Shown here piece after piece: positions 26,362-61,293 of a stretch of 64,000 nt of DNA (position 1 is the first letter of the stretch; every line of letters begins with the position of its first letter). This DNA is from Macrostomum lignano (Eukaryota). The position numbers and the translations under genes were made by a program. Location: NCBI GenBank assembly GCA_002269645.1, contig NIVC01001769.1:62001-126000 (forward strand), in the 5' to 3' direction. The notes under the pieces are model-generated. The model did no database searches. It worked only from the letters and a program-made list of their open reading frames with translations, and was not told where the DNA came from.

Positions 26362-29300
26362 ATGCAACTAAAATGGCTCGTTGCGGCCCTGATTTTGAGC
26401 AGCCTGACTCAAGCTCCAGCTGGCACTCGAATCTACAAGAGTAGAAAAAAAGTGATCGCCATGGTGGGAGGCAGGACAGGAGAGGGTGAGCTCTTTGTTT
26501 TTTTATCAACTTTGCCTTCTTAACATGTACAATACATGATTTTGTTGTTTATGGCTCTTGGCTTTGAACTTGGCTTTCCACACTCCGATGACATTTGTCC
26601 TTGAGGATTCTGGGTAACATTCCGGCTGTCTCACCGTTTGAGTATTTTACATCGAGGATATTGCGCCTCTGGGATATTTTTACCCGAGGATATTTCACCT
26701 TGAGGATGCTTCATCTTGTGGATATTTTTCACCTTGGGGATATTTTACCTTGAGGATATTTCACCTGGAGGATATTTCACCTTGGGGATATTTCACCTTG
26801 GGGATATTTCACCTTGGGGATATTTCACCTTGGGGATATTTCACCTTGAGGATATTTCACCCTGGGGATATTTCACCTTGGGGATATTTCACCTTGGGGA
26901 TATTTCACCTTGAGGATATTTCACATTGGGGATATTTCACCTTGAAGATATTTCACCCTGGGGATATTTCACCTTGGGGATATTTTTGTAAAATTTCAAT
27001 GTTTTTAATAACTGTGCAATGCTTTTTTATTTACGAATCCATTTAGCCAAGCTGCACTTCAGCAGCTGCGAGCAGAGCAGCAACACAGACGCCTGCGTCA
27101 TGGCCATCGACGACTCTGTAAGCGACGAGTTCAGCCAGTGCGCTCACACGGACACCGAAAACAAAGCTAGCTGGAAGGGCTACCTTGAGAACCCGGCCTA
27201 CGTGTCTAGCGTGAGAATCATCAACTCGGACTGGAGACGACTCGGGATGAAGGTTTGTAAAACATTTCTCTCTCTCTCTCTCCCATATCTCAAGATACAT
27301 AGAGAACATAAAGCGTTTTGTATTTCACTTAACAGGACGGCCTGATGGAGTTCACAATCAGCGGCGGTGGTGAGGTCTGCTACACGCACTTATCTAATAC
27401 ATCATTTCTGACTAAAACCTTTCCCTGCGATATCCTGACAAGCTATATAGAGATCAAGAGCACAATGGAAGATGCGGCAATTGTTGTGTGCGACGTGCAA
27501 GTGAGAGGCGCCACGCTGTCATTTCCGACCATTCTGCAGTATCCGCCTCCGTAAGTATCGTGATTACCCAGATCCTAGATCCCAGATCCTAGATCCCAGA
27601 TCCTAGATCCCAGATCCTAGATCCCAGATCCTAGATCCCAGATCCTAGATCCCAGATCCTAGATCCCAGATCCTAGATCCCAGATCCTAGATCCCAGATC
27701 CTAGATCCCAGATCCTAGATCCCAGATCCTAGATCCCAGATCCTAGATCCCAGATCCTAGATCCCAGATCCTAGATCCCAGATCCTAGATCCCAGATCCT
27801 AGATCCCAGATCCTAGATCCCAGATCCTAGATCCCAGATCCTAGATCCCAGATCCTAGATCCCAGATCCTAGATCCCAGATCCTAGATCCCAGATCCTAG
27901 ATCCCAGATCCTAGATCCCAGATCCTAGATCCCAGATCCTAGATCCCAGATCCTAGATCCCAGATCCTAGATCCCAGATCCTAGATCCCAGATCCTAGAT
28001 CCCAGATCCTAGATCCCAGATCCTAGATCCCAGATCCTAGATCCCAGATCCTAGATCCCAGATCCTAGATCCCAGATCCTAGATCCCAGATCCTAGATCC
28101 CAGATCCTAGATCCCAGATCCTAGATCCCAGATCCTAGATCCCAGATCCGAGATCCCAGATGCTGGATCCCAGTTGCCTGACCAGGAATATTTATTCTAC
28201 TGTGTAATATTTCAGGAAAATAGAGCTCTCCGATTGCGATCAGAGCAGTATCAAGGGTACTAACAACTGTTGGTTTGCGGTGGACGGGAACTCCCAGCAT
28301 CAGCATGCTAACAAAGGCTACTGCGCCATGAGCCAGCTGGGAGAGTACGAATGGTGGTCCACTTCATTTAAGCTGCCAGCGATAGTGCAGCAAGTTATTC
28401 TTTACAATCGGATCGACTGTTGTCAGCAGGATTTGACCAATTTTGCGGTCACCGTTAGCGCGCAGCGGTGCGGCAGGTGAGTCGGGTGCCAGGTGTCTGA
28501 TGTGATGGACAGGTGTCTGATGTGATGGACAGGTGTCTGATGTGATGGACAGGTGTCTGATGTGATGGACAGGTGTCTGATGTGATGGACAGGTGTCTGA
28601 TGTGATGGACAGGTGTCTGATGTGATGGACAGGTGTCTGATGTGATGGACAGGTGTCTGATGTGATGGACAGGTGTCTTATGTAATGGATAGGTGTCTTA
28701 GGTTAGATGGACAGATGTCTCATGAGGTAGACAGGTGTCTTATCTTAGGTGGACAGGGGTCTCATGAGGTAGACAGGTATCTCACGTGATATATAGGTGT
28801 CCCGTGTGATGAACAAGTGGTGTTACTGTGATTAGCAGGTGTCTTATCTTAGACAGATATCTTAGGTGAGAAAAGCAGGTGTCTCATGTGATGGACAGGT
28901 GTCTCATAGTATAAACGCGTCACTTTTGAGCTTTTCTGTGTCTATTAGTGTCTCTGGCGTTTTGCTTACTAAATTTTTATCTGAATTCAAACTGGGCCCT
29001 TGAAATGAAAAGTTAAACTTAAAAAAATTGATATTTATTTGCAGATACAACAGTCCAGCTACGTTCAATATTAAGTCATTTCGGTGCAACTTATTTGGCA
29101 GCAATGTGCGGGTTCAACACATGAGCAAAACAGGTCGAGTGACTCTTTGCGAAGTGCAAGTTCTCGGTCACACCGCTGCCTTGACACCGGAGCAGTTGAG
29201 GGGTAAAAGGGGGATTTTTCTAGGCACATCGCCAAATACTCGTAGTTCTACGAGCATTGTAGATGAATACTGACTGAAGACCTGACCTGGCGTCTACCCT

Positions 29301-30833
29301 GACTCACCTGACACAGCTCTACTCTGACTCACCTGACACAGCTCTACTCTGAATCACCTGACACGGATACTCTGACTCACCTGGCACAGCTCTACTCTGA
29401 CTCACCTGACACAGCTCTACTCTGAATCACCTGACACGGATACTCTGACTCACCTGACACAGCTCTACTCTGACTCACCTGACACGGATACTCTGACTCA
29501 CCTGACACAGCTCTACTCTGAATCACCTGACACGGATACTCTGACTCACCTGACACAGCTACTCTGACTCAATTGACACAGCTACTATGACTCACCTGAC
29601 ACAGCTCTACCCTGACTCACCTGACACAGCTCCTATGACTCACCTGACACAGCTCTACTCTGAATCACCTGACACAGCTACTCTGACTCGCCTGACACAG
29701 CTACTCTGACTCGCCTGACGAAGCTACTGACTCACCTGACACAGCTACTCTGACTCACCTGACACGGATACTCTGACTCACTTGGCACAGCTACTATGAC
29801 TCGCCTGACACAGCTACTCTGACTCACCTGACACAGCTACTCTGACTCACCTGACACGGATACTCTGACTCACCTGACACGGATACTCTGACTCACCTGA
29901 CACGGATACTCTGACTCACCTGACACAGCTACTCTGACTCACCTGACACGGATACTCTGACTCACCTGACACAGCTACTCTGACTCACCCAACACAGCTA
30001 CTATGACTCACCTGACACAGCTCTACCCTGACTCACCTGACACTGCTCCTATGACTCACCTGACACAGCTCTACTCTGAATCACCTGACACAGCTACTCT
30101 GACTTGCCTGACACAGCTACTCTGACTCGCCCGACACAGCTACTCTGACTCGCCTGACACGGATACTCTGACTCACCTGACACAGCTACTCTGACTCACC
30201 TGACACGGATACTCTGACTCACCTGACACAGCTACTCTGACTCACCCAACACAGCTCTACTCTGACTCACCTGACACATAATCTGACTTACCTGACACAT
30301 ACTCTGACTCACCTGACACAGCTCTACTCTGACTCACCTGACACAGCTACTCTGACTCACCTGACACATAATCTGACTCACCTGACACATACTCTGACTC
30401 ACCTGACACAGCTCTACTCTGACTCACCTGACACAGTTCTACTCTGACTCACCTGACACAGCTCTACTCTGACTCACCTGACACAGCTCTACTCTGACTC
30501 ACCTGACACAGCTCTACTCGATCTGACTCACCTAACATTCCCAATTTTACAGAGTATAAAGGCTGCTTCAAAGACAGCCCAAAGGATCCGGACCTAAGCG
30601 ACTTCAAAGACCCAGTGTCGCTGTCGGCCATGGAGGTGAACAAATGCGACAGAATCTGCCGCAGGCTGGGCAAACGCTACTTCGGCATTCAAGGCGGGAT
30701 GCAGTGCTGGTGCGGCAGCAAATTCGGAAAGCACGGCAAAGTCCCGGACTCCGAGTGCGGCATGCCCTGCGAAGGCCGGCACCTGCAGTATTGCGGCGGC
30801 GATAATCGAAATCTTGTATTTGAACTGCTGTAA
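26362..30833 (+). CDS. Lectin gene A: signal peptide + 2 F-type-lectin-like domains + WSC; 6 exons (26362-26485, 27047-27252, 27336-27550, 28216-28476, 29045-29202, 30553-30833), 414 aa
   Basis: All introns are GT-AG with phases 1,0,2,2,1 and the joined CDS is 1245 nt. FTLD motifs C.QSS..AVDGN..C..WW..YNRIDCC..LCEVQV.G. WSC motif YKGCF.D..C...C...YFG.Q.G..CWCG..C..PC.G....CGG. Confidence 0.85.
26640..26985. repeat. 16-bp minisatellite (TATTTCACCTTGGGGA) in gene A intron 1
   Basis: Directly visible, about 20 units. Confidence 0.95.
27568..28165. repeat. 14-bp minisatellite (AGATCCCAGATCCT) filling gene A intron 3
   Basis: Nearly perfect array of about 42 units. Confidence 0.97.
28488..28905. 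repeat. 20-bp minisatellite (CAGGTGTCTGATGTGATGGA) in gene A intron 4
   Basis: About 10 perfect units starting 12 nt after the donor, then degenerate units. Confidence 0.95.
29295..30535. repeat. 23-25-bp minisatellite (GACTCACCTGACACAGCT[CT]ACTCT) filling gene A intron 5
   Basis: About 50 variant units. Confidence 0.97.
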
Positions 30834-33541: not shown

Positions 33542-36500
33542 TCACACGAGAATCTCATAGACTGTGGTGAAGTTCCGTCCTCCGCAGGCCATGCCTCCGT
33601 CGTTCACGCATCCGAGATTGCACTTTTCTATTGCGGCGCTGCCATACCGGCCGTACTTGTTGCCGCAAAGGCAGGCTCGACCATTTTGCAAGCCGAAGTA
33701 GAGCTTGTTCAAGCGTTTGCACATTCGGTGGCATTTTCTTGGTTCCATAAACGAGTAGCTGATGACTTGTTCCATTTCCGGGTTATCCGGATCGTCATGA
33801 AAGCATCCTTTATGCTCTGGGGATATTGCAGAAGGGTTTCAGATCAGTGCTTTTTATCAGACATCTTCATAGGCGTAGTTAGAATTGTTATAAACCTGCA
33901 TGCTACAGCAGCACCAGGGGCTTTAGCACCAGGGACTTTAGCACCAGGGGCACCAGGGGCTTTAGCTTCATTATACATGCATAGCATAGAGCAATCACTG
34001 TTTTGAAGCAGACACAGCAAAACGTTGGACTCACCATGCCTCACGTCGGGATACAAGAGCGTTTTGTAGCCAAACACCTGTATTTGGCACACTGTGATGG
34101 CCGATTTCAACACTCGGCTCTCCAGTTTGACATTGTTGCCAAATCGAGTGCATCGAAATACCTTGCTTATAAACGGTTCAATAGACTCGTGTACAGCGCA
34201 GCTAGCTGAATTAACTAGGATGGCAAATTTATTCAGCAAATTGTTGCAGCACTTGTCCATCCGATTGTAAACTTTCACGTGTTTAATTAGCGTCGGCGTC
34301 ATTAAATAAACGGACAACCAGGACCGCGAGTACTCCTCTTCTCCCGGCAGAGTCAATGCACACTTTTTGCCGCTCTGGCCATGGAAAACGGCGAAATTCC
34401 GGTCGGTGGCGTCTTCGCATTTGCTGTTCTCCGCCGATGAGCTCATTAAGCAACCTGAGAAGCCAATCTCTCTTGAATTGGTTTAGAAAAATTTGTTCAG
34501 AAGTATATTATGAACCCGCCATTCTGAACCTGCCATTCTGAATCTGCCTATTCTGAATCTGCCATTCTGAACCCGCCATTCTGAATCTGCCATTCTGAAT
34601 CTGCCATTCTAAATCTGCCATTCTGAATCTGCCATTCTGAATCTGCCATTCTGAATCTGCCATTCTGAATCTGCCATTCTGAATCTGCCATTCTGAATCT
34701 GCCATTCTGAATCTACCTATTCTGAGTCTGCCATTCTGAATTTGCCCATTCTGAATCTGCTATTCTGAACCTACCCATTCTGAACTTGCCCATTCTGAAT
34801 CTGCCATTCTGAATCTGCCATTCTGAATCTGCCATTCTGAATCTGCTATTCTGAATCTGCCATTCTGAATCTGCCATTCTGAATCTGCCTATTCTGAATC
34901 TGCCATTCTGAATCTGCCATACTGAATCTGCCTATTCTGAATCTGCCTATTCTGAATCTGCCATTCTGAATCTGCCATTCTGAATCTGCCCTAAATCTGC
35001 CATTCTGAATCTGCCCATTTTAAATCTGCTATTCTGAATATGCTATTCTGAATCTGCCATTCTGAATATGCCAATCTAAAGACTCAAGCTCGCCTTAATT
35101 AACCACCTTAGCCACAGATTATCAAGCTCGTTTTTAACTCACGCCTCTCCGCTATCCAACCCTTGGAAAGTCAGAGGCTTTCCATAGACTTCGATTTCGC
35201 ACAATGACATGATGCTGTTGACACGGAAGCTTCGAATTAAAATTCTGTCTGCCATTGCGTCGCAAGGAAACGATCGAGTGATGAACGACTGTGACGAAAT
35301 GTGCCGATAGCAGGTGCTGTCGCCGGCGTATATGCCGAAATCGTGCATGGCGTTGAGCATCGCCTCGTCTGGCAGCTTCGCCGTGTGAATGACAACTCGA
35401 GCGATGTAAGAAGGCGTCTCAAGTTCGGCCTTAAGCGGAGAAAATAATAACTATTGACGTGTCAGTTCTCTAAAGACTGCACGAGTAAAAGTGAAGTGGG
35501 GAGTAAATTATTTGCCCAGTTATTGTCTAGACCCGTGAACTCCAACTCGAAAATCCTCTCTATCCAGCCCGGGGGCCCTTTGAAACTTCACGATAACAAT
35601 ACGGTCTCTTCTTAGCGGTCTTGAGCGGTGAACTACTGCAGCAGCGCCTGATGCCATGGCTCATTGGGGAGTTGCTGAGATGCCATGGCTCATTGGGGAG
35701 TTGCTGCGATGATAATTAGCTCAATGGGGGAGTTGCTGAGATACCAGTTGGCTCAATGTGGAGTTGCTGAGATGCCAATTGGCTCAATGGGGGAGTTGCT
35801 CAGATACCAGTTGGCTCATTGGGAGTTGCTGAGATGATAATTAGCTCAATGGATGAGTTGCTAAGATACCAGTTGGCTCAATGTGGAGTTGCTGAGATGC
35901 CAATTGGCTCAATGTGGAGTTGCTGAGATGCCATGGCTCATTGGGGAGTTGTTGAGATGCCATGGCTCAAATAGGATGCTGATATAGTTGACTATATATT
36001 TCTAAAATCAGTTGGAATGCATATCAATCCCACTTATCAATAATTGCAATAACAATGAGTAGAATTGAACTCACCTTCCAAAAGCTACTGAGCTCAGGTA
36101 CAGTCGAAACGCATTGAGTCCATTCTTGAACAATGCTGCCGTCAATAGCCAGATTGCAGTTCCCGGATGAGGAGCTCTGGCGACAGCGCTCTAGGTGTAG
36201 GCGTTCTGGAAGCAATTCAATGTAAATTGCAGATACGCAAGTCCAGATTTACTGTTGTAAATCTGCAAATACGGTTAAGAGTGCACTAGATCCAAGAGGA
36301 TAGATTTGTCTGAAAATCTGAGTTGATGCCTTCATCATGAGATTCTGTAATAAAGGATGCCTTCATCATGAGATTCTGTAATAAAGGATGCCTTCATCAT
36401 GAGATTCTGTAATAAAGGATGCCTTCATCATGAGATTCTGTAATAAAGGATGCCTTCATCATGAGATTCTGTAATAAAGGATGCCTTCATCATGAGATTC

Positions 36501-36790
36501 TGTAATAAAGGAAGACTTCATCATGAGATTCTGTAATAAAGGAAGATTTCATCATGAGATTCTGTAATGATACCGATCCTCACAATAGGTTGCTTAAAAA
36601 GAGCACTAAGTCTCCATGGCTTTAGCTACTCACCTTCATTGAAGTTGTCGTATCCAAGCATGCGGTACATCACTTGCCGAGTTTTAAAGAGTTGAAGCCC
36701 CACAACATTGGTTGAAAATAAAATCTGAAGTAGCAGTGCCAGAAATACGCAATTTCGATCTGGTAGACTTGAAAACCATTTTAAATGCAT
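33542..36790 (-). CDS. Lectin gene B: signal peptide + 2 F-type-lectin-like domains + WSC; 5 exons (36790-36634, 36205-36075, 35429-35143, 34471-34035, 33816-33542), 428 aa
   Basis: GT-AG introns with phases 1,0,2,1 and a joined CDS of 1287 nt with no stop. The start MHLKW matches gene A MQLKW. YNRMDKCC and WSC cysteine patterns are present. Confidence 0.85.
34515..35075. repeat. 14-bp minisatellite (CTGAATCTGCCATT) in gene B intron 3
   Basis: About 40 variant units. A second array lies at 56244-56760. Confidence 0.96.
35650..35975. repeat. About 29-31-bp degenerate minisatellite (GGAGTTGCTGAGATGCCATGGCTCAATG) in gene B intron 2
   Basis: About 11 units. The paralogous array is at 57330-57610. 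Confidence 0.9.
36325..36567. repeat. 31-bp minisatellite (GATGCCTTCATCATGAGATTCTGTAATAAAG) in gene B intron 1
   Basis: About 8 units here but only one unit at the paralogous site near 57898-57925. Confidence 0.93.
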
Positions 36791-37029
36791 TGCCCCAACT
36801 GTTTATTAGCTTAATTTTTTGTGAAACAACTAAAAGGCAGTCAAGAGTCAGTGTGAATTTTTTTAAATAGAATGTAAGCATTTTTGATGGCTTTTTGCAC
36901 CATAGATATATATCTTTTGTTACTTAGGGGTCCCTTTTATTTAAACAGAGGGAATGTAAATTAATATAAAAAGTATACGTGACGTCAGCACGACCAATAA
37001 CCATAACTAATTTAAGAAATGTATTATAA

Positions 37030-37293
37030 TAATTATTTATTACACCTGCCCTAATTAGCAGATATGCAGCCGTCACCTCAGCCGCAGCTATTCACGGTGC
37101 ATCTGAAGGCTGCGTACGGCTGTTCAGTCCAAGGACTGTGGGGGGGGGGGTCGCCACACGCATCCTCAATTACCCCAGCTAATGCTGGCACCAATTTTAC
37201 AGCAGGGTGAACAGAAGCAATGCAGAGTTAAGTCTCTTGCTTAAGGACCCAAATTGTTCCAAGTAGGATGAGAATCGAACCCCCGACCTTCGG
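37030..37293 (-). mobile_element. SINE family 1, head partly truncated
   Basis: Reverse complement of the family body up to GAATCGAACCCCCGACCTTC. Confidence 0.85.
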
Positions 37294-37871
37294 TCTCCTG
37301 CTGCGAAGACTCAATAAGACATGTACAAGGCAAGGACTACTAGGATAACGTCCTAATATAACAAAGTGTTCCTAGTGGTCCTTGGTACAAGGTACTGTAT
37401 CAAGCCTCCTTATCTAATTTATTCAATTCTGTAGAGTTCTAAATATCTGGGTACTATTGAAGATATCTATATATATTCTACAACAACTCAGATCCTCTAT
37501 ACTTACATGTAAATGACTCCAAAAACTCTCTTTCTAGCTACTCGTACATGTACTTGTACATGTACGTGGGTATATTAAACTGTCAAAACCGGAGACCCGC
37601 TAAATTTTAAATAGCTAGCATAGTTTTTAATCAATTTTAGCGACACTTGTATTATTTACTTGGCTGAAAACATCAATCGCCTACAGAATTGGTGATTTTT
37701 CATATTTGTAAAATTCCAAGTGCAGCTATACTCCAGTATAAAATCTGTGAGATCAGAGAACGCCCGTACTCTAAATTAACAATTAATCTATGTACTTTAG
37801 ACACGGTTTCAAATTTCAAACTGTTCAACTGAATCACCTGTCTATATTATTACAAGCTAGTCTTCAATGAA

Positions 37872-38190
37872 ATGGGGGTTGTAGCCTAGTGGTCAGAGCG
37901 TAGGACTCACGACTTGAAGGTCGGGGGTTCGATTCCTGATCCCACTGGAACAATTTGTATCCTTAAGTAAGACACTTAACTCTGCATTGCCTTAGTTCAT
38001 CTAGCGGTAAAATGGGTGCCAGCATTAACTGGGCTAATTGAGGGTGTGTGTGGCGATCCCCAGTCCTTGGACTGAACAGCCGTACGCAGCCTTCAGATGC
38101 GCCGCGCAATAGCTGCGGCTGAGCTGTTGGTTGCACATCTGCCCATTAGGTTTTAGCTAATTAGGGCAGGTGTAATCAATTTTTAATATT
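37872..38190 (+). mobile_element. SINE family 1, full length
   Basis: GGGGTTGTAGCCTAGTGGTCAGAGCG...GGTTCGATTCC head plus core and body. Confidence 0.9.
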
Positions 38191-39113
38191 ATCAACAAAA
38201 AACATAAGAAACTAACGCCTTGTTTAATTTACTAATTTTAAAAACCTTACAAAGAACTCAGAGATCACCAAGCTTTTGTGTACTTTCAGTCATTCAGACA
38301 TACAGTATATATGTACTACTAGAAAATGAAATTACATTTACGAGGTGTTACCCAGAGAAAAACTCTTAGGGAAGAAATTTACATATATATTTAACTGACT
38401 ATGGTGCTTAGTCACAAAGGATTTTTAGTTTTAATGATAATGATCACTATAAATACACGTACATGAAGGCAGGACAAGACAGATAAAGAAGGAATTTAAA
38501 TTAAAAAATGACCGCACTCTTATAAGGTCCAATAAGAAAATGCTAATTATATAATAACAGTAAAGCATTTTCTGCTAATCTATAGCTGTCTCGTGTTCTA
38601 ATTACATGTTTGTTTTGCCTCCAATACAAAACAGCACTGTCCGGACAAATAGTATCAGGATCTAACATAGAGAGCCAATACTACTATTAAAGCAGAAGTC
38701 GAAACCCATTCTCTGTGGCACGCTCATAACCAGCTAGTTACTTTCAAATAACTCGCATATATATAAACACGATCTACTATATATCTATGGATTTGGAATG
38801 AATTTATTTATAGAGATGGTAATTCTGATACAATATAAATATATTGTATACTCTATTATATATTGCATTGTGGGATCGCGAGTGGTATCATGATTACCAT
38901 CTCTATATATATTCATTACAAATCCATTTCCAGTCGGACACATTTGTCTATGGTCGAAAATTAGGAGCCCGATGATTTGGCTCTATTGGCTATATTGGCT
39001 AATATTGGCTATATTAGCTATATTGGCTCTCTATGTTAGCTTGGCACTCTTCTGTTCAGGACCGACACACTCTCAAAAATCAAAATAGAGGAAAAAAAAA
39101 TATAGCTGCTAAT

Positions 39114-42100
39114 TTACAGAATAATCTCGTAGACGCTATTCTGATAGTGACCGCCGCACCGTTTGGACTTGCTATAGATGCACCGTTTATCGCAGGCTTT
39201 CGGTTCCTTTGCTTCGCCATATCTGCCAAACTTGTTGCCGCAATAGCACAATCGACCATTTTGCAGTCCAAAATAGAGCTTGTTTAGGCGTTTACACATC
39301 CTATGGCATTTTGAAATCGACATAAACGTTAGCGATACCAATTGCTCAAGGTCCGGCTGCTTTGGATTGTCCTTGTAGCACCCTATATATTCTGATTGGG
39401 AAGTTGGTTTGGATATCATAAAATAACAAATAAAAACTTTGTTTTACTTAATTAATTAAATACTGAATAAATGTAAATGTCTGCGCTTGTTTGCCATCAC
39501 TGAGACCGCAGTTAGACTGGTCAACCTTAAATAAGTTGACACTTTTCTGTAAGAGGTCTCTACCCTGTAAGGGCGCTTTTCCCAAGCCCCGAGAGTCCAG
39601 TTGTGGATCCGCACCATACTCTGCGACACATGCAAAACACGAGCTACTTGTAAAGCAGAACTCACTTTGTAGCTCTTTCGGACGCAGCAATGTTGAGTAG
39701 CCGAAAACCTGCAATTGGCACAGATGTAGGCCCGCACCGGGTACCGAGACCACTTGCACGTGTTGGCCGAACCGCGTGCAGTTAAAGATCTTCGTAACAA
39801 ATGGATTTGCATCATTGTGGTCTAAGCATTTATAGTAATTAATGTGAAGAGTAAAGTGGTTCAGACTATTTTTACAGCATTTGTCCATCCGGTTGAAGAG
39901 CTTGACGTGTTTTACAAGGGCCGACTCTTTGAAGTAGGCGCGCATCCAAGCTTCTTCTGCAGATTTGTCGCTCGGGATGTCAAGGCACTTTTTACCATGT
40001 TCGCCATTGAATACGGCAAAGTTGCGGTCAAAAGCATGCTTACAGATGTTTAACTGCCAGTCGACTGATGATGAGCAATAGTTTAACGCGATTTCGCTAA
40101 AAAGATTATTGCGGGTGTCTACTGTTTCAAATAGACGACAACTCTTAGAAAGCAAATCGTTGAAATTATAAACTATGAAGAGTGATAATTCTCATTCTGC
40201 ATCAAATGTACTAATGTACTAATGTACATGTACTAATAGATTCGATCCTATATACTTATACACTAAAAGTTGTGTTCATTTTTTGTTCGAATGCATAATC
40301 TTTAAAAACAAACTCTGTCTGTTTTGAATTGGCGTTTTTTTATTGATTTTCCGCAAGCGTTTCCCCAGCATGAATAGAATTTTCGCTAGTTTTTTAGAAC
40401 CCGACTTTGATCAAAACTGAACGTGAAAAGGTGTAGTATTGTTAAGCTAAGTAGTGTAAATACCTTTTCAACTTCGAATTCGTCAGGCATGCACGCAGCT
40501 AATCCTAGTGCTACGAGTATATGATGGACACGGACATTTTGGATTGATGATTCGTGTCAAAATACGAGTACTACAAACTTTTCATTTCGACTAGCCTTGA
40601 CTTACTTAGGTGACGGTTCTTCAGTTTTTTTTGTTGATCTTCATTCCCATTTCCGCTGTGTGTGAATTTTTACATTTTCAATACACAGCGCCCAAAGCTC
40701 CAAGTAAATACAAAGTGACACATTTCACTCACTTCGTCGAATTCACACTTTTGAGAAATTCGAAGTTGAAAATGTATATAAACAGCCAAAACAAGGAACC
40801 GTTAAAACACTAACTATTTAATACTGATCTGCGATCAAAAGGCTGTACATAAATATTTATTCATCGCTATATCCATCAACTTTACAACAGGTAGACGTCC
40901 CACTATATGCGAATTTTATAAAGAAAAGCAGACTAGAGAGAAAAATACACTAGGTACGAGGTAGATAGGAACAACATAAACTTTCATGTCATTTACGTGC
41001 TTCCCCATCTTCAGTAGAATTTCTTGAAAAAAGCTCTATAGTGTGAATGTGAATCAAACTCAAAGAAACTCTTAGCTAAGAAAGAAAGAAAGCAACTTAG
41101 CTACGTCGCGGCAGACTTGAGTTGAGGAATGACGTGGGGGGAGCGGTGTGCGAGGGTTTTGTTGGACGGATTAAAGCTACCCCGATCAGTTTCTCGCATC
41201 TTTTATTTCAGAATAGTCTAAGAGAAATTTCTCACAGGCCAATAGAGAGGCGACTTTTCAATGTTGCTGAGTATATGTGCTAATCCTAAAAACTGCATGA
41301 GTGAAATATCCGACTTAGAATGGAATTTTTCTGTCTTGCCAGTTGCCAGTGTATGGCGTGCAATTTAGTCGTCCATAGTCCACTATTTCACGGAATCGTG
41401 AGCAATTCCCTAAACTTACGCAGCTCCATTTTCGAGTTCCTGGAACGCAAGCGCCTTTCCATAGACTTCAACTTCGCAAAGGGACATTACGGCATCCTTT
41501 CTATCGCTGCTCAACTCGATGAAATCGGTGAACACGTCGCACGGAAACGATCGACTGGAGAATGAAGCAGCTGCATTATGCCTGTAGCAAGCTGTTCCGC
41601 CAGCATAAATGATAAATTGGTTGAGAGCGCTTTGCATTGCCGCGTCAGGTAGAGGCGCGGTGTGAATTACCACTTTAGATACGTAAGCTGGCGTTTCCAA
41701 GAAAGCCTGGAAATGGGTTTTGTTGGGTGTAGCACAATGAAGCCAATGTATAGTACATGAGTCAATGCGGATGGTGTGCGCAGGTATCTCTTATGTAGAT
41801 GAATTGCCTGTTCTATCTTAATAACTTGTACTTGTACTTGTTTGCTCCATAGACTCAGCAACCATAGACAATTGCTTGTTTGTCTTTTCCTCACTTTTTT
41901 TCTCTAACCTTTATGTACATAACACTGGCCTGTTCACACGCGCTCCTTCGAATAAACTTTTTCTTGACCACATCATGGAGCTGAGATCCGCAGCTTTCAT
42001 TTGAATCAAGTTACAATTGAAACGGACTGAAATTATGTCCGCTAGAAGACATCGTAGCAAGGGTTCCGGAACTTTTGACGGACAGTATAATATACCAATA

Positions 42101-48100: not shown

Positions 48101-48704
48101 TATCAAAAGATGAACATTGGGTCTGCCTCCTATCGAAAGAAATAACAATTTTTGTTCCGAATAAATGAAAACTTCCTATCTCCGTAGTGTATTTTCGGCG
48201 AAAGTGAGGATCTGGGAGGCTGGCCCGGCAACTGAGGATCTGGGAGGCTGGCCCAGCAACTGAGGATCTGGGAGGCTGGCCCAGCAACTGAGGATCTGGG
48301 AGGCTGGCCCAGCAACTGAGGATCTAGGAGGCTGGCCCAGCAACTGAGGATCTGGGAGGCTGGCCCAACAACTGAGGATCTGGGAGGCTGGCCAAGCAAC
48401 TGAGGATCTGATAAGTCTTATTGTGCAACAGAGCCAGACAGTTGGACAAACAATTTTAGTATCAAAATGCTCTCATTAGTGCCATAGCGTATACATTGGA
48501 ACAGATAGGAAATGTGAATTTAATTAGCTAGATCAACGTGTGAATCTTACCTTCGTTTGTGTTATCTGCATTAATTCTACGATAATATTCTTCCCGTGAC
48601 ACAAATGTACCACGTTCAAGTGTTGCATGGATTTCGCAGGAAAATAGCAGTAACAGAAGTTGTAGAAGCAGCGATCCTGGCATGCGAAGACTTAACAGTC
48701 TCAT
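39114..48704 (-). CDS. Lectin gene C: signal peptide + 2 F-type-lectin-like domains + WSC; 5 exons (48704-48551, 43439-43309, 41706-41420, 40096-39666, 39391-39114), 426 aa
   Basis: Exons 2 and 3 have the same lengths as in gene B (131 and 287 nt) and the same phases 1,0,2,1. Leader MRLLSLRMPGSLLLQLLLLLFSC. Joined CDS is 1281 nt. The exon 2 donor (GTAATA) is weak and an upstream ATG at 48722 is possible. Confidence 0.82.
42466..43151 (+). mobile_element. hAT-type MITE carrying a (CTCTC)n microsatellite, in gene C intron 2
   Basis: Imperfect 15-bp TIRs CTGGGGTCGGCCAAC and GTTTGCCGACCCCTG. The 8-bp flanks ATTTAGAG and ATTCAAAA match at 5 of 8 positions. Confidence 0.7.
43906..43942 (-). mobile_element. 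Helitron-type 3' terminus
   Basis: Minus strand GCCCCGAAGGGGGGC hairpin followed by ..CACTAGATTGCTAG|T. Confidence 0.45.
44140..44580. repeat. Degenerate short-period repeat (GATAGCAAGCATCC)
   Basis: Recurring AGATAGCAAGCA motif with variable spacers. Confidence 0.85.
44590..47320. repeat. 24-bp minisatellite (CAAGTGCAATAATCCTTGGTTTAT), more than 100 units, in gene C intron 1
   Basis: Directly visible. It explains the DKPRIIAL, LHLINQGL and SSAIILGL ORFs. Confidence 0.97.
47690..48010 (+). mobile_element. Non-autonomous Helitron/Helentron-like element
   Basis: AAGTTCGAAGAAAATCGGTTGAGCCGTTTT followed by a (CA)n/ACAGAC microsatellite and TTTTAGTATAT, the layout of Lep1/HINE-type elements. 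Confidence 0.45.
48206..48410. repeat. 28-bp minisatellite (GAGGATCTGGGAGGCTGGCCCAGCAACT) x7
   Basis: Directly visible, 140 bp from the gene C exon 1 donor. Confidence 0.95.
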
Positions 48705-49029
48705 CCAACCACCGTGATGCATTTTTCAATGTCCGTTGAACTTCAGTGCATGTGTTACAATCAAAGTGTGTATCTGAAAATCGAAATGCCTTGGCTGAAT
48801 GAGCGGCGTGTAGGCTTGGCCATAGACATGGCCCGCATTTTTGAAAGAAATAGATCAGAAATAGGCGCCATGATATTCAAATGAAAGATTGATGGACTGA
48901 TCGATCGATATTTGCAAATAAAGTATCAGCTCTCTTGTAAGTACGAGCTAGTTGGGCTAACACCCCCGACTGACGGCAGTTTCCCGCGCGGCTGTCTCCG
49001 CCTCCCCCCCGCCCTCTGCAGAGCTCTGC

Positions 49030-55330: not shown

Positions 55331-56243
55331 TATTTGGTACGTGTAATACCCCTCAAGAAGTCAGGGAAGGGATTATTCTTGAATATTGGGTTAAAACGTA
55401 CAGTTTGCTATAAACCTAGCTATAATAATTTTAACATATACAGTCGGTAAAGCGGCCCGTTGATTTCAATTGAAATTTAAACTGTCTCTCACAAACTCTC
55501 TCTCTCTCTCCTTCTGAACCCACTGAGAAAAGTGGCTTATGAGACAATCAGTTAGACAAGTTTAGTATACTGAAATTGGCAAAACACCCAACACCCAATT
55601 GTCATTAGACTCGTCTTCACAGCACAGACCCATATCGAACAGAACCACTCGTCCCTGTCTCTCTGACCTTACCATTTCTAACTGTCAAGGAATTCCGACC
55701 CTCCCTCTCCAATTTCAGTGTACAAACAGATATTTTCACAGCACAGACTCATATATTGAGTCTCCTTCAACCAAAACCCTATCTTGATTACGTCATCCAC
55801 CTCCCCATAGGAGCAGTTAGCAAGAAACAAAATTTTTCAATGCACATTTGAACACTGCAAACCCTGCAAAATCGCACATCTACGGGTCGATTTCGATTGA
55901 CAATTTAATACCTTTTGTTGATGCTGCTGTGTACAGTAGTCTTATTTCCGAAGCTCCTAGCAGTCATCTTTTAGGTGTGGTGAATCAGTGTCGTTGTTGC
56001 CAACTTTACATCTCGATTCATCCTCCAAATTCTTAAAATCTGACCATATTCAATAATTTAACCCATGCAAGTAGATTTGCCAATTCGTCAAATTAGCCAA
56101 TACGAATGGGGCCAGAGGATCCCCCAACAGAATCGAGTCAATCTTTTACCAAATCGAGCCCTTGTCTCTCCCAGGCCTCTCTCTCCTACACATACCCAGA
56201 AAAGTGACTCATGAGGCAATCAGTTTGACAGGTTCAGTATACA

Positions 56244-56760
56244 GTCTGAATCTGCCATTCTAAATCTGCCATTCCTAATCTGCCATTCTGAATCTGCCAT
56301 TCCTAATCTGCCATTCTGAATCTGCCCATTCCTAATCTGCCATTCTGAACCTGCCCATTCCTAATCTGCCATTCTGAACCTGCCCGTTCTGAACCTGCTC
56401 ATTCTGAACCTGCCCATTCTGAATCTGCCATTCTGAATCTGCCATTCCTAATCTGCCATTCTGAATCTGCCCATTCCTAATCTGCCATTCTGAACCTGCC
56501 CGTTCTGAACCTGCTCATTCTGAACCTACCCATTCTGAATCTGCCATTCTGAATCTGACATTCTGAACCTACCAATTATGAATCTGCCATTCTGAATCTG
56601 CCATTCTGAATCTGCCATTCTGAATCTGCCATTTTGAACCTGCCATTCTGAATCTGCCATTCTGAATCTGCCCTAAATCTGCCATTCTGAATCTGCCCAT
56701 TCTAAATCTGCTATTCTGAATATGCTATTCTGAATCTGCCATTCTGAATATGCCAATCTA
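56244..56760. repeat. 14-bp minisatellite (CTGAATCTGCCATT); left edge of the duplication
   Basis: Same unit as 34515-35075. The flank on the right is homologous to 35075 onward and the flank on the left is unrelated. Confidence 0.95.
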
Positions 56761-56824
56761 AAGACTCAAGCTCGCCTAAATTAACCACCTTAGCCACAGA
56801 TTATCAAGCTCGTTTTTAACTCAC

Positions 56825-58159
56825 GCCTCTCCGCTATCCAACCCTTGGAAAGTCAGAGGCTTTCCATAGACTTCGATTTCGCACAATGACATGATGCTGT
56901 TGACACGGAAGCTTCGAATTAAAATTCTGTCTGCCATTGCGTCGCAAGGAAACGATCGAGTGATGAACGACTGTGACGAAATGTGCCGATAGCAGGTGGT
57001 GTCACCGGCGTATATGCCGAAATCGTGCATGGCGTTGAGCATCGCCTCGTCTGGCAGCTTCGCCGTGTGAATGACAACTCGAGCGATGTAAGAAGGCGTC
57101 TCAAGTTCGGCCTTAAGCGGAGAAAATAATAACTATTGACGTGTCAGTTCTCTAAAGACTGCACGAGTAAAAGTGAAGTGGGGAGTAAATTGTTTGCCCA
57201 GTTATTGTCTAGACCCGTGAACTCCACCTCGAAAATCCTCTCTATCCAGCCCGAGGGCCCTTTGAAACTTCACGATAACAATATGGCCTCTTCTTAGCGG
57301 CCTTGAGCGGTGAACTACTGCAGCAGCGCCTGATGCCATGGCTCAATGTGGAGTTGCTGAGATGATAATTAGCTCAATGGGGTAGTTGCTGAGATGCTAT
57401 GACTCAATGAGTGAGTTGCTGAGATGCCATGGCTCATTGGGGAGTTGCTGAGATGCTAATTGGCTCAATGTGGAGTTGCTGAGATGCCATGGCTCGATGG
57501 GGGAGTTGCTGAGATGTCATGGCTCATTGGGGAGTTGCTGAGATGCCATGGCTCAATGGGGAATTTCTGAGATGCCATGGCTCAATGGGAGGAGTTTCTG
57601 AGATGCCATTTGCTGGAATTTATATCAACCTTGGTTATCAATAATTGCAATAACAATGACTGCAATTGTACTCACCTTCCAAAAGCTACTGATTTCAGGT
57701 ACAGTCGAGACGCATTGAGTCCATTCTTGAACAATGCTTCCGTCAATAGCCAGATTGCAGTTCCCGGATGAAGAGCTCTGGCGACAGCGCTCCAGGTGTA
57801 GGCGTTCTGTAAACAATTCAAGGTAAATTGCAGCTCTAATTGCTAAACTTCAAATAAATGTACGTTTGGGAGTGCACTAGATCAAAGAGAATAGTTTTGA
57901 TGCTTTCACCATCGAGATTCTGTAATATCTAGATAATGATGCTAATCCTCACAATAGGCTGCTTAAACAGAGCACTAAGTCTCAATGGCTTTAGCTACTC
58001 ACCTTCGTTGAAATCGTCGGATCCAAGCATGCGGTACATCACTTGGCGAGTTTTAAAGAGTTGTATTCCTGCAACATCGGCTGAAAATAAAATCTGAAGT
58101 AGCACTGCCAGAAATACGCAATTTCGATCTGGTAGACTTGAAAGCCATTTCATTTGCAT
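56825..58159 (-). pseudogene. Lectin gene B' : exons 1-3 only (58159-58003, 57806-57676, 57111-56825)
   Basis: Same exon sizes as gene B (157, 131, 287 nt) with intact splice sites and frames. No exon 4 or WSC exon found between 48.7 and 56.2 kb. Confidence 0.75.
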
Positions 58160-58374
58160 TGTACTGACTGTTTAGTTAGCACAATTCAATGTTTTGGCTT
58201 GATGTTTTTGTGAAACAACTAAAAAGCTGTCTAAAAAAGTTAGTGTGCAATTTTTGCATTTTTAAAATGAATGTTAGCATTTTGATAGGTATAGACATAG
58301 ACATATATATATAAAAGAATATTACGACCAATAATAACCATAACTAATTTAAGAAATGCAATAATATACTAAAA

Positions 58375-58662
58375 TTTGAATATAATGCACCTGCCCTAAT
58401 TAAAATATTTGCAACCGACAGCTCAGCCGCAGCTTTTGCGCGGCGCATCTGAAGGCTGCGTACGGCTGTTCAGTCCAAGGACTGGAGGGGTCGCCAACAT
58501 GGCTAAATTACCTTCAATTACCCCAGAAAATGCCGGCACCCATTTTACAGGTGGGTGAACTGAAGCAATGCAGAGTTGAGTGTCTTGCTTCGGGACAAAT
58601 ACTCGTAGTTCCGAGTAGGTAGAGAATCGAACTCCCGACCGACGTTCTAACCACTAGGCTAC
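58375..58662 (-). mobile_element. SINE family 1 (paralog of the 37030 copy)
   Basis: Reverse complement of the family body and head to TTCTAACCACTAGGCTACAACC. Confidence 0.85.
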
Positions 58663-59155
58663 AACCATAAAGACTGTCTCCTGCTGCGAAGACATTAAAA
58701 AGGTAGTGTATCAAGCCTTTGAATCTAATTTAATAAATTCTTTAGAGTTTGAATATCTGGGTGTTATTGAAGATATCCATATATTCAATGACAACTCCGT
58801 CCATTACTTGGATAACTCCAAAAAACTCCTCTTACTTTCATATACAAGTGGGTGGATTAAACTGTTAAAACCAAAAACCCGCAAAGTTTTAAATAACATT
58901 TTTAATCGATTTTAGCAATCTTTTTTCATTGTTTACTCGGCTAAAATCCTTGTGTCCTACAGAGTTGTCGAATTTTCATATTTGTACAATTCCCAGCTAG
59001 TGCAGCTATTTCAGAATGAAGTATAAATCTGTTCGAACATAGAACGCCGGTACTCTAAATTAACAATTAATCGATGTACTTCACACACGGTTTAAAATTG
59101 TTAAACTTTTCGACTGGATCACCTGTCGGTATTACTATACAATTATTCAATAAAA

Positions 59156-59455
59156 CGGGGTTGTAGCCTAGTGGTCAGAGCGTAGGACTCACGACTTAAA
59201 CACGATTCGATTCCCGATCCCCACTGAAACAATTTGTCATTGGGCAAGAAACTTAACTCCGCATTGCTTCGGTTCACCCAGCTGTAAAATGGGTGCCAGC
59301 ATTAGCTGGGGTAATTGAGGGTGTGTGGGGCGACCCCCCCCCAGTTCTTGGACTGAACAGCCGTACGCAGCCTTCAGATGCGCCGCGCAATAGCTGCGGC
59401 TGAGCTGTCGGTTGCACATCGTGCTATCAGGGCAGGTCTAATAAATTATTAATAT
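59156..59455 (+). mobile_element. SINE family 1 (paralog of the 37872 copy)
   Basis: GGGGTTGTAGCCTAGTGG head, core and body. Confidence 0.88.
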
Positions 59456-60309
59456 TACTATGAATAAAAAAGAAAGGAAACTATAACATCTTGTTTTAAT
59501 TTATTTATTTTAAAACCTTACAAAGAACTGAGAGATCACCAAGTTTTTGTGTACTTTCAAAGTCACATTCAGACGTACAGTATGTACTACTAAAAATGAA
59601 GTACATTTACGAAGTGTTGCCCAGTAAGAAACTCTTAGGAAAGAAATTTATTCAACTGACTGTAGTGCTTAGTCACAAATTATTTTTGTTTTAATGATAA
59701 TGAGCACTTTATAAATAAATGTACATGGAGGCAGGTCATGGGACACCGTGGGAAGACAGTGAATAATACAGAATTTAAATAAAAAATGACCGCTCACTTA
59801 TAATCTCCAGTAAGCAAATGCTATTAATAAGAGTACAGCATTTTCTGTTAACCCACAGTTGTTTCGAGTTATTAATTGCAGGTATGTTTTGCCTCAAAAA
59901 TAAAACATCACTGTCCGGACAAATAGTATCGGGATCTAACATATAGAGAGCCAATACTGCTACTACGCTCGTAGTATTAAAGGTGAAGCCGAAATCCATT
60001 CTCTGTGGCACGTTCATAAACAGCTAGTTGCTTTCAAATCGCATATATATTATATGTATATTGTATCATAATCATATATATATGATTATGATAAATCAGA
60101 TGATCATTATAAATCAGCAACCATGCAATCATTTCTAGTTGTATAATTTGGCTTATGGTCGAAAATTAGAAGCCCGAGGATTTGGGATTTTGTGCTTCAG
60201 CTTAGCTATTAGCTATATTGGCTCTCTATGTTAGCTTGGTAAACTTCTGGTCAGGATCAATACACTCTCAAAAATAAAATTGCAGAAAAATACTCATAGT
60301 TGCTATAAT

Positions 60310-61293
60310 TTACAGAATAATCTCGTAGACGCTATTCTGATAGTGACCGCCGCACCGTTTGGACTTGCTATAGATGCACCGTTTATCGCAGGCTTTCGGT
60401 TCCTTTGCTTCGCCATATCTGCCAAACTTGTTGCCGCAATAGCACAATCGACCATTTTGCAGTCCAAAATAGAGCTTGTTTAGGCGTTTACACATCCTAT
60501 GGCATTTTGAAATCGACAAAAACGTTAGCGATACCAATTGCTCAAGGTCCGGCTGCTTTGGATTGTCCTTGTGGCACCCTATATATTCTGATTGGGAAGT
60601 TGGTTCGGATATCATAAAATAACAAATAAAAAAATTTGTTTTGCTTAATTAATTAAATACTGAATAAATGTAAATGTCTGCGCTTGTTTGCCATCACTGA
60701 GACCGCAGTTAGACTGGTCAACCTTAAATAAGTTGACACTTTTCTGTAAGAGGTCTCTACCCTGTAAGGGCGCTTTTCCTAAGCCCCGAGAGTCCAGTTG
60801 TGGATCCGCACCATACTCTGCGACACATGCAAAACACGAGCTACTTGTAAAGCAGAACTCACTTTGTAGCTCAGTCGGACGCAGCAATGTTAAGTAGCCG
60901 AAAATCTGCAATTGGCACAGATGTAGGCCCGCACCGGGTACCGAGACCACTTTCACGTGATGGCCGAACCGCATGCAGTTAAAGATCTTCGTAACAAATG
61001 GATTTGCATCAATGTGTTCTGTGCATTTATAGTAACTAATGTAAAGAGTAAAGTGGTTCAGACTATTTTTACAGCATTTGTCCATCCGGTTGAAGAGCTT
61101 GACGTGTTTTACAAGGGCCGACTCTTTGAAGTAGGCGCGCATCCAAGCTTCTTCTGCAGATTTGTCGCTCGGGATGTCAAGGCACTTTTTACCATGTTCG
61201 CCATTGAATACGGCAAAGTTGCGGTCAAAAGCATGCTTACAGATGTTTAACTGCCAGTCGACTGATGATGAGCAATAGTTTAACGCGATTTCG
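60310..61293 (-). CDS. Lectin gene C' : exons 4-5 (61293-60863, 60587-60310); 5' exons absent from the window
   Basis: Same exon sizes as gene C (431, 278 nt), open frames and intact splice sites. Exons 1-3 may lie beyond 64000, past the Polinton-like insertion. Confidence 0.75.

What the first reader, a model, noticed from the sequence alone, without database searches (positions are those of the whole stretch)
26362..61293. Tandem family of secreted double F-type-lectin + WSC proteins
Three complete genes and two partial copies share the architecture signal peptide - FTLD - FTLD - WSC. It is only visible after splicing exons across minisatellite-filled introns (seen: phases, exon sizes, Cys motifs). 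Both domain types are carbohydrate-binding modules (established). I do not recognise this exact architecture as a named family. A locally expanding cluster next to a FReD gene suggests a glycan-recognition, mucus or immune locus (inference).
Basis: partly seen in the sequence, partly recalled or inferred. Interest (0 to 1): 0.78.

Follow-up and report, generated by a model that had tools for sequence, protein, structure and literature searches.

The report
Flatworm secreted double-F-lectin plus WSC genes
The window, from the flatworm Macrostomum lignano, holds a tandem cluster of real genes for secreted proteins with two F-type-lectin-like domains and a WSC domain; this domain combination was found only in this species, and it lacks the residues that normally bind fucose.

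Summary
The window is Macrostomum lignano contig NIVC01001769.1. I rebuilt three complete genes by hand, all with GT-AG introns. They are identical to three consecutive GenBank proteins (PAA64272-74) from an RNA-seq-guided annotation.

Each protein is signal peptide, FTLD, FTLD, WSC. The WSC domain is unambiguous. Both FTLD types hit only solved F-type lectins in the PDB, and the best match is the two-domain fish fucolectin FBP32.

None of the six FTLDs keeps the full His/Arg/Arg fucose triad, so fucose binding should not be assumed.

Of the two "partial" copies, one (c4, exons 1-3) is a true 5' fragment. It is intact and under purifying selection. The other (c5, exons 4-5) is probably a fourth complete gene cut off by the window edge.

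An exhaustive HMMER search found the exact architecture only in M. lignano. Looser FTLD+WSC mixes occur in a hemichordate and a crinoid.

No expression or ligand data could be linked to these genes. The "immune/mucus locus" idea stays an inference, and a reproductive-secretion role is an equally open rival.

Verdict: real and transcript-annotated, but unstudied. It is a new domain combination in a lectin family already known for domain shuffling. Interest is modest.

The parts
26362..30833 (+). Gene c1 (Mlig006795g2, PAA64272.1), 414 aa. Coding exons 26362-26485 (signal peptide), 27047-27252 and 27336-27550 (FTLD1), 28216-28476 and 29045-29202 (FTLD2), 30553-30833 (WSC plus stop).
   Evidence: Hand model with AG/GT at all junctions. 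It is 100% identical to P0001. Pfam gives WSC 8.8e-18 and PF22633 1.3e-9.
33542..36790 (-). Gene c2 (Mlig025061g2, PAA64273.1), 428 aa. Exons 36634-36790 (signal peptide), 36075-36205 and 35143-35429 (FTLD1), 34035-34471 (FTLD2), 33542-33816 (WSC plus stop).
   Evidence: Hand model is identical to P0005. dN/dS against the paralogous locus is 0.046.
39114..48722 (-). Gene c3 (Mlig008416g2, PAA64274.1), 432 aa. Exons 48551-48722 (signal peptide), 43309-43439 and 41420-41706 (FTLD1), 39666-40096 (FTLD2), 39114-39391 (WSC plus stop). Intron 1 is 5.1 kb and holds the 24-mer array 44703-47322.
   Evidence: Hand model is identical to P0002. The gene span is confirmed in the NCBI record.
56825..58159 (-). 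Copy c4, a true 5' fragment of the c2 type. Exons 58003-58159 (signal peptide), 57676-57806 and 56825-57111 (FTLD1). There are no exons 4-5. Reading through the last donor gives ...SGEA and then a stop.
   Evidence: Intact ORF with AG/GT sites. It is not called as a gene in the NCBI record. No exon 4/5 remnant lies in the 8.1 kb downstream. dN/dS is 0.27 against c2 (0.09 in FTLD1) and 0.094 against its counterpart in L002.
60310..61293 (-). Copy c5, exons 4-5 of the c3 type: 60863-61293 (FTLD2) and 60310-60587 (WSC plus stop). Probably the 3' end of a fourth gene whose exons 1-3 lie beyond base 64000.
   Evidence: Intact ORF and splice sites. Collinearity with L002, where intact exons 1-3 lie 11-48 kb upstream.
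34563..40207 (.). Segmental duplication, copy A. It runs from c2 intron 3 through c2 exons 3-1 and the intergenic DNA to c3 exons 5-4.
   Evidence: Self-blastn gives 78-94.5% identity to 56242-61404. The left breakpoint lies inside the 14-mer minisatellite 34507-35077.
56242..61404 (.). Segmental duplication, copy B. It carries c4 (exons 1-3) and c5 (exons 4-5).
   Evidence: The left breakpoint is at the edge of the 14-mer array 56245-56759.
22484..23856 (+). Neighbouring fibrinogen-related (FReD) gene. It is context only, not a family member. Its ORF pieces are 22484-23272 and 23371-23856.
   Evidence: Pfam Fibrinogen_C at E 5.8e-11 and 9.4e-22.

Best explanation
This is a Macrostomum-specific, tandemly duplicated family of secreted proteins of about 45 kDa. 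Each is built from a signal peptide, two F-type-lectin-fold jelly-roll domains that are internal duplicates of one another, and a C-terminal cysteine-rich WSC domain.

Shown: the genes are real, spliced as modelled and present in transcript-guided annotation. The domains belong to the FTLD and WSC families. c2 and c4 are under purifying selection. The cluster grew by duplication of a two-gene unit (c3 type plus c2 type), after which one copy lost its 3' exons.

Inferred: the proteins act outside the cell as multivalent binders, most likely of glycans, that cross-link or coat a secreted or surface matrix such as mucus, egg or ejaculate material, or microbes. The canonical fucose triad (His, Arg, Arg/Lys) is incomplete in all six domains. 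Any sugar binding is therefore expected to be non-canonical, or to be carried mainly by the WSC module and the FTLD2 Arg-x-Asp core.
For: - Gene models match GenBank proteins exactly, and that annotation is RNA-seq guided.
- WSC: Pfam E 4.7e-13 to 8.8e-18 against a cutoff of 27.8 bits. It matches Kremen1 WSC at E 1.7e-10. All eight Cys are invariant.
- FTLD: the F1 profile hits 3cqo at 5.6e-15 and the F2 profile at 2.6e-16. Every significant PDB hit is an F-type lectin domain.
- F1 against F2 by hhalign gives 99.5% probability, E 2.5e-22.
- The AF2 model has FTLD cores at pLDDT 70-87. Its Foldseek top hit is 3cqo at E 6e-13 over 318 columns.
- Each protein has an N-terminal hydrophobic segment only, with no other membrane-strength stretch.
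- Purifying selection: c2 has omega 0.046 between loci and c4 has 0.09.
- The same gene order is found on two further contigs.
- Relatives in M. lignano pair FTLDs with WSC, Kringle or ricin-B domains, and some of them keep the full triad.
Against: - No ligand, expression or localisation data were found for these genes.
- Triad: His is kept only in c1 FTLD1. Arg-x-Asp is kept only in the three FTLD2 domains. The final basic residue is absent everywhere.
- FTLD folds without the triad may have lost sugar binding, as the review notes for Drosophila CG9095 and some oyster isoforms.
- The WSC part of the AF2 model is poor (pLDDT below 50).
- Pfam PF22633 scores for c2 and c3 only just reach the cutoff (27.9 and 29.7 against 27.8 bits).
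Confidence: 0.6

Rival explanations
1. They are classical fucose-binding F-type lectins that act as innate-immune or mucus pattern-recognition molecules. The adjacent FReD gene would be part of one immune locus.
For: FTLD and FReD domains are typical of invertebrate immune lectins. The FReD gene is real and lies 2.5 kb upstream of c1. Lineage-specific tandem expansion is typical of immune gene families.
Against: The fucose triad is incomplete in all six FTLDs. No infection or expression data were found. Adjacency of two genes is weak evidence. c2 evolves under strong constraint (omega 0.046), not the diversification usual for recognition receptors.
Confidence: 0.15
2. They are reproductive secretions, for example prostate/seminal-fluid, antrum or shell/cement-gland proteins, that act on the partner or on gametes.
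For: WSC-domain and ficolin/angiopoietin-like (FReD) transcripts are conspicuous in the BLAST table of the M. lignano seminal-fluid in situ screen (PMC5977470 Table S1). Mlig-pro46 and several other candidates resemble WSCD2 (PMC6953679). F-lectin repeats act in fertilisation elsewhere. The c3/c5 FTLD2 exon shows 12.5 nonsynonymous against 0.5 synonymous changes.
Against: The 18 Mlig-pro transcripts that are mapped to Mlig_3_7 gene IDs do not include Mlig006795, Mlig025061, Mlig008416 or Mlig024563. No screened transcript was described as a fucolectin. The excess of nonsynonymous changes is not significant against neutrality.
Confidence: 0.15
3. They are non-lectin binders or structural components. 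The FTLD jelly rolls would have been co-opted for protein or lipid binding, as in discoidin/F5-F8 C domains, and the WSC domain would act as a protein-interaction module, as in Kremen-DKK.
For: The sugar triad is lost. Foldseek also returns neuropilin b1b2, factor V/VIII C1C2 and DDR1 discoidin pairs at E around 1e-8. The closest solved WSC domain is Kremen1.
Against: At sequence level only F-type lectins are hit, not discoidin domains. The Arg-x-Asp-Cys-Cys core is retained in every FTLD2.
Confidence: 0.1

Closest known systems
Binary tandem F-type lectins of fish (Morone saxatilis FBP32, PDB 3cqo)
   Same: Secreted, with two tandem FTLDs. It is the best sequence-profile and structural match for both domains.
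   Different: FBP32 has no WSC domain and keeps functional fucose-binding residues. The flatworm proteins add a C-terminal WSC domain and lack a complete triad in every domain.
Other M. lignano FTLD/WSC proteins (e.g. UniProt A0A1I8GQJ8, A0A1I8J2B5, A0A1I8HUV8; paralogue group Mlig024563g1-3)
   Same: They use the same two domain types in the same species. Mlig024563 has exactly the FTLD1-FTLD2-WSC order, at 33% identity to c1.
   Different: Several of the others have different domain orders or numbers and keep the canonical CTHT...NRxDCCxxRL motif. Some are older gene models that may fuse neighbouring genes.
FTLD+WSC proteins of deuterostomes (Glandiceps talaboti XP_077989192.1; Anneissia japonica XP_033112682.1)
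   Same: WSC and FTLD occur in one secreted polypeptide. The crinoid FTLD keeps the full motif.
   Different: The order is reversed (WSC first) and the copy numbers differ (W-Fx5 and W-W-F). There is no FTLD1-type domain.
Metazoan WSC-domain proteins (Kremen1/2, WSCD1/2, polycystin-1)
   Same: A WSC domain with eight cysteines. Kremen1 WSC is the closest solved structure (E 1.7e-10).
   Different: Those are membrane proteins with kringle/CUB, sulfotransferase or PKD contexts. The proteins here are small and soluble, and WSC is the C-terminal module.

Membership tests
F-type lectin domain (FTLD / FTP, SMART SM00607; Pfam PF22633 / PF00754 clan) | Sequence and fold similarity to the F-type jelly roll. 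| tested here: met
   The F1 profile hits 3cqo at E 5.6e-15 and the F2 profile at 2.6e-16. 1k12, 2j1r, 2j22, 3le0 and 4gwi are also hit, and no non-FTLD is hit significantly. PF22633 scores 39, 27.9 and 29.7 bits against a cutoff of 27.8. The Foldseek top hit is 3cqo at E 6e-13.
F-type lectin domain (functional fucolectin) | Fucose-binding motif His ... Arg-x-Asp-x4-(Arg/Lys), as defined in PMC5712786. | tested here: not met
   His is present only in c1 FTLD1 (CAHT). Elsewhere it is Ser, Ser, Met, Leu and Leu/Asp. Arg-x-Asp is present only in the FTLD2 domains (NRID, NRMD). The final basic residue is replaced by Asp, Asn/Leu or Asn/Ser (alignments; motif definition).
F-type lectin domain | Cation-binding motif h2-D-G-x. 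| tested here: inconclusive
   Exact in c2 FTLD1 (AIDGS) and c1 FTLD2 (AVDGN). Altered in c1 FTLD1 (AIDDS), c3 FTLD1 (AIDNQ), c2 FTLD2 (ATDRN) and c3 FTLD2 (AFDRN).
F-type lectin domain | Demonstrated fucose or glycan binding. | not testable with these tools
   This needs recombinant protein with glycan arrays or calorimetry.
WSC domain (Pfam PF01822) | HMM score above the curated cutoff, and eight conserved cysteines. | tested here: met
   Scores are 64.7, 49.6 and 57.8 bits against a cutoff of 27.8, over profile positions 1-82. Eight Cys are invariant among c1-c3 and Mlig024563. Kremen1 WSC is matched at E 1.7e-10.
Binary tandem FTLs (FBP32 type) | Exactly two FTLDs and no other domain. | tested here: not met
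   Two FTLDs are present, but a WSC domain is appended.
M. lignano prostate-limited seminal-fluid candidates (Mlig-pro set) | Listed among transcripts shown by in situ hybridisation to be prostate-limited. | tested here: inconclusive
   The genes are absent from the 18 Mlig-pro transcripts that are mapped to Mlig_3_7 IDs. The remaining candidates are listed only under RNA815 IDs and could not be mapped.

The most novel reading that the evidence does not exclude
The locus may work as a cassette system. Several alternative 5' modules (promoter, signal peptide and FTLD1: the c4 fragment, the distal c5-gene exons 1-3, and c3's own exons 1-3) would be spliced onto a shared 3' module (FTLD2 plus WSC of c3). 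This would resemble clustered protocadherin or UGT1A loci and would give combinatorial diversity in a secreted lectin-like protein.

Observations consistent with this:
- c4 has no 3' exons of its own, yet it is intact in two loci and under purifying selection (omega about 0.09).
- Its last donor is in phase 2, which matches the c3 exon-4 acceptor.
- The GenBank model for the paralogous locus (PAA71864.1) spans 66 kb and joins distal exons 1-3 to the proximal exons 4-5, skipping an intact exon 4-5 pair and two exon 1-3 sets.

The 66-kb model could equally be a transcript-mapping artefact among near-identical copies. c4 could instead encode a short secreted single-FTLD protein, because read-through of its donor hits a stop after one codon.
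Probability: 0.08. Interest if true: 0.6.

Novelty: new variant of a known kind. Interest (0 to 1): 0.3.

Why it matters
F-type lectins are known for domain shuffling, but WSC is not among the partner domains listed in the family review I read. Here the combination has expanded in one flatworm lineage while losing the canonical sugar-binding residues.

That makes these proteins a natural test of what an F-type fold does once the fucose triad is gone. M. lignano has transgenesis and RNAi, so function can be tested directly.

The locus also shows intronic minisatellites at the breakpoints of a gene-scale duplication. It shows as well how near-identical paralogous loci can confound gene models in this genome.

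Beyond that, it is an ordinary lineage-specific secreted-protein family.

Tried and rejected
- Single-ORF Pfam scans gave only sub-threshold FTLD hits. Joined models and profiles were needed.
- My first acceptor for the c3 FTLD2 exon (phase 1, at 40064) was wrong. The phase-2 acceptor at 40096 fits the upstream donor and the GenBank protein.
- An apparent in-frame extension of c3 exon 3 (..RIDSCTIHWLHCATP..) looked like an FTLD1 N-half. It is intron; the true exon 2 lies 1.6 kb upstream at 43309-43439.
- The word-indexed protein search found only M. lignano proteins. The exhaustive HMMER search was needed to see other taxa.
- Gene IDs were searched in paper texts and in the supplements of four M. 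lignano papers. There were no hits.
- Seminal-fluid link: the 18 mapped Mlig-pro IDs do not include these genes.
- Pseudogene reading for c4: rejected because of the intact ORF, conserved splice sites and low dN/dS.
- Positive selection on the c3/c5 FTLD2 exon (omega about 7): not claimed. With 13 changes, 0-1 synonymous is not significantly different from neutral, and c5 may simply be relaxed.
Full report
**Source and setting**

The window is eukaryotic and rich in minisatellites. The copy-1 protein is 100% identical to GenBank "hypothetical protein BOX15_Mlig006795g2" of the free-living flatworm Macrostomum lignano. The DNA maps to contig NIVC01001769.1 of assembly GCA_002269645.1, with window base 1 at about record base 62001. 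In this genome, simple and tandem repeats make up about 15% of the sequence (PMC5730564). Repeat-filled introns are therefore a property of the genome, not of this locus.

**Checking the observation**

tblastn with the clearest exons found four WSC exons and the matching FTLD exons, on both strands. I then read the junctions base by base and assembled the models in a script that prints the flanking dinucleotides.
- Every internal junction is AG...GT.
- The intron phases are 1 after the signal-peptide exon, 0 inside FTLD1, 2 between the FTLDs and 1 before WSC.
- c1 (+, 26362-30833) has six coding exons.
- c2 (-, 33542-36790) and c3 (-, 39114-48722) have five each.
- c3's first intron is 5.1 kb and contains a 2.6-kb 24-mer array.
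- c1 differs from c2 and c3 in intron positions. Its FTLD1 intron lies 25 codons further downstream, and its FTLD2 has an extra intron.

The three models equal PAA64272.1, PAA64273.1 and PAA64274.1, which are consecutive accessions on one contig. That annotation was built from RNA-seq (StringTie/TACO) and a de novo transcriptome. My independent models therefore have indirect junction support, although I could not inspect reads directly.

**The partial copies**

Self-alignment shows that 34563-40207 is duplicated at 56242-61404, at 78-94.5% identity. The second block carries c4 (exons 1-3 of the c2 type) and c5 (exons 4-5 of the c3 type). Both have intact reading frames and splice sites.

I fetched the paralogous locus L002 (contig NIVC01001131.1). 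It is collinear with the window. In gene-sense order it holds a distal gene with exons 1-3, then c5-type exons 4-5, then a c4-type exon 1-3 set without 3' exons, then c3, c2 and c1.

Window 61405-64000 matches the DNA just upstream of the L002 c5-type exon 4 at 97.8%. In L002, exon 3 of that gene lies 11 kb further upstream. So c5 is most likely a fourth complete gene cut by the window edge.

c4 is a true fragment. The 8.1 kb between it and c3 is 98.4% identical in the two loci and contains no exon 4/5 remnant. The simplest history is a tandem duplication of a two-gene unit (c3 type plus c2 type), followed by loss of the 3' exons of the upstream c2-type copy. One breakpoint of the surviving homology lies in an intronic 14-mer minisatellite.

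**Domain identity**

WSC is unambiguous:
- Pfam scores are 50-65 bits against a 27.8-bit cutoff, over the full profile length.
- Kremen1 WSC is the best solved relative, at E 1.7e-10.
- Eight cysteines are invariant.

The FTLDs are weaker in Pfam. PF22633 scores 39, 27.9 and 29.7 bits. They are clear with profiles:
- The FTLD1 profile hits FBP32 (3cqo) at 5.6e-15, and the FTLD2 profile hits it at 2.6e-16.
- The S. mitis and S. pneumoniae F-lectin domains and eel agglutinin 1k12 follow. No other fold is hit significantly.
- FTLD1 and FTLD2 are homologous to each other (hhalign 99.5%, E 2.5e-22).

An AF2 model from a five-sequence alignment is only moderate (mean pLDDT 58.8). The two jelly-roll cores reach 70-87, and the WSC part is poor. 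The model's best PDB match is again 3cqo (E 6e-13, 318 columns), followed by discoidin/CBM32 domain pairs.

The only strongly hydrophobic stretch in each protein is N-terminal. This fits secreted soluble proteins.

**Binding residues**

The family review defines the fucose motif as His ... Arg-x-Asp-x4-(Arg/Lys), and the cation motif as h2-D-G-x (PMC5712786). From the alignments to FBP32 and among the paralogues:
- His survives only in c1 FTLD1.
- Arg-x-Asp and the vicinal Cys-Cys survive only in the three FTLD2 domains.
- The last basic residue is missing in all six domains.
- The cation motif is exact in two of the six.

Other M. lignano FTLD/WSC proteins and the crinoid protein keep the full motif. 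The loss is therefore specific to this subfamily. These proteins belong to the FTLD fold family but fail the functional fucolectin test.

**Distribution**

The exhaustive HMMER search of 1.84 billion representatives gave 8892 hits at E up to 0.001. I re-annotated the top 150 with domain HMMs built from the window's proteins. Most are multi-WSC or multi-FTLD proteins.

The exact FTLD1-FTLD2-WSC architecture occurs only in M. lignano. It is found in the three genes here, their copies on two other contigs, and one further paralogue group, Mlig024563g1-3.

Other FTLD+WSC combinations occur in M. lignano, the hemichordate Glandiceps talaboti, the crinoid Anneissia japonica and one metagenomic contig. 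M. lignano also joins FTLDs to Kringle and ricin-B domains.

**Selection**

| Comparison | Synonymous changes | Nonsynonymous changes | omega |
|---|---|---|---|
| c2, window vs L002 | 6 | 1 | 0.046 |
| c4, window vs L002 | 3 | 1 | 0.094 |
| c4 vs c2, FTLD1 exons | 6 | 2 | 0.09 |
| c3, window vs L002 | 1.5 | 3.5 | 0.63 |
| c5, window vs L002 | 11 | 28 | 0.65 |
| c3 vs c5, exons 4-5 | 0.5 | 14.5 | about 7.5 |

By a hand binomial calculation, six or more synonymous among the eight c4-c2 FTLD1 changes has P of about 0.002 under neutrality. In contrast, the non-coding DNA around c2 and c4 is only 78-89% identical.

c3 is nearly identical between loci, and its exons 1-3 are 100% identical in DNA. 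c5 is more divergent and more relaxed.

The c3-c5 nonsynonymous changes cluster in FTLD2. With so few changes the ratio is not significantly above 1.

**Function**

I found no paper that names these genes and no hit in the supplements I could search.

The M. lignano seminal-fluid literature is suggestive but not linked to these genes. The BLAST table of the in situ screen for seminal-fluid candidates contains many WSC-domain and some ficolin/angiopoietin-like transcripts, and Mlig-pro46 resembles WSCD2. However, the 18 candidates mapped to current gene IDs do not include these genes.

I therefore commit to the general mechanism the anatomy supports. These are secreted, three-module, probably multivalent binders of extracellular glycans or glycoconjugates, with non-canonical specificity. 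Tissue and biological role remain open between surface/mucus defence and reproductive secretion.

**An unresolved oddity**

The GenBank model for the paralogous locus (PAA71864.1) spans 66 kb. It joins the distal exons 1-3 to the proximal exons 4-5 and skips intact intermediate exons. Together with the constrained, 3'-less c4 and the matching intron phases, this leaves room for alternative 5' cassettes spliced to shared 3' exons. It may equally be a mapping artefact among near-identical copies. Junction reads would settle it.

**Verdict**

The functional inference is untested and is weakened by the missing triad. This is a new domain combination, and a lineage-specific expansion, within a lectin family known for domain shuffling. 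The genes are already present as unnamed "hypothetical / WSC domain-containing" proteins in public databases.

Noticed in passing
window 22484-23856 (+): A fibrinogen-related (FReD) gene lies 2.5 kb upstream of c1. Pfam Fibrinogen_C scores E 5.8e-11 and 9.4e-22 on two ORF pieces, and an N-terminal signal-like segment is present. Ficolin- and angiopoietin-like transcripts are listed in the BLAST table of the M. lignano seminal-fluid in situ screen, but no link to this gene was shown.
   Followed up: partly
window introns of c1-c4, e.g. 26643-26985, 27567-28173, 28490-28904, 29294-30513, 34507-35077, 35650-35970, 36325-36568, 42540-43022, 44703-47322, 48205-48410, 57332-57609: Almost every intron of the family consists mostly of one minisatellite, with a different unit (5 to 31 bp) in each intron. 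The 14-mer of c2 intron 3 is shared with the array after c4 exon 3 and marks a breakpoint of the segmental duplication.
   Followed up: partly
L002 10001-76140 (NIVC01001131.1), paralogue of window c3/c5: GenBank gene Mlig008416g1 (PAA71864.1) is modelled over 66 kb with a 35-kb intron. It joins distal exons 1-3 to the proximal exons 4-5 and skips an intact c5-type exon 4-5 pair, a c4-type exon 1-3 set and the c3-type exons 1-3. This is either long-range or alternative splicing, or a transcript-mapping artefact.
   Followed up: partly
window 60863-61293 vs 39666-40096: The FTLD2 exons of c5 and c3 differ by 12.5 nonsynonymous and 0.5 synonymous changes. The changes cluster at HINYYKCLDHND -> YISYYKCTEHID and nearby. 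The intron between exons 4 and 5 is 98.2% identical. The ratio is not significant against neutrality.
   Followed up: partly
window 27253-27335 and 28477-29044 (c1) vs c2/c3: Intron positions differ between paralogues. c1's FTLD1 intron lies 25 codons downstream of the c2/c3 position, and c1's FTLD2 carries an intron that c2 and c3 lack. This implies intron gain, loss or sliding within the family.
   Followed up: no
window 270-1128 (-), and ORFs up to about 2300: A fragment of an LTR-type retrotransposon pol gene. Pfam gives RVT_1 at E 1.1e-15 and RT_RNaseH at E 1.1e-17.
   Followed up: no
window 6123-8087 (+): A single uninterrupted 654-aa ORF with no Pfam match at E up to 0.01. It is unusually long for an intron-rich genome and may belong to a mobile element.
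   Followed up: no
window 15271-15852 (-) and 18450-19046 (-): Two ORFs encode small Cys-rich proteins with one hydrophobic segment and weak, sub-threshold Shisa_N matches (E 5e-4 and 8.5e-3). They look like a paralogous pair.
   Followed up: no
window 16559-16776, 24591-24864, 37050-37291, 37879-38150, 58407-58640, 59161-59424: A dispersed repeat of about 220-270 bp is present in at least six copies in both orientations at 80-89% identity. It looks like a short interspersed element.
   Followed up: no
window 56825 (c4) and 35143 (c2), exon 3 donors: The exon-3 donor GC|GTGAGT puts a TGA in frame one codon after the exon end. An unspliced c4 transcript would therefore encode a complete 192-aa signal peptide plus FTLD1 protein.
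   Followed up: no
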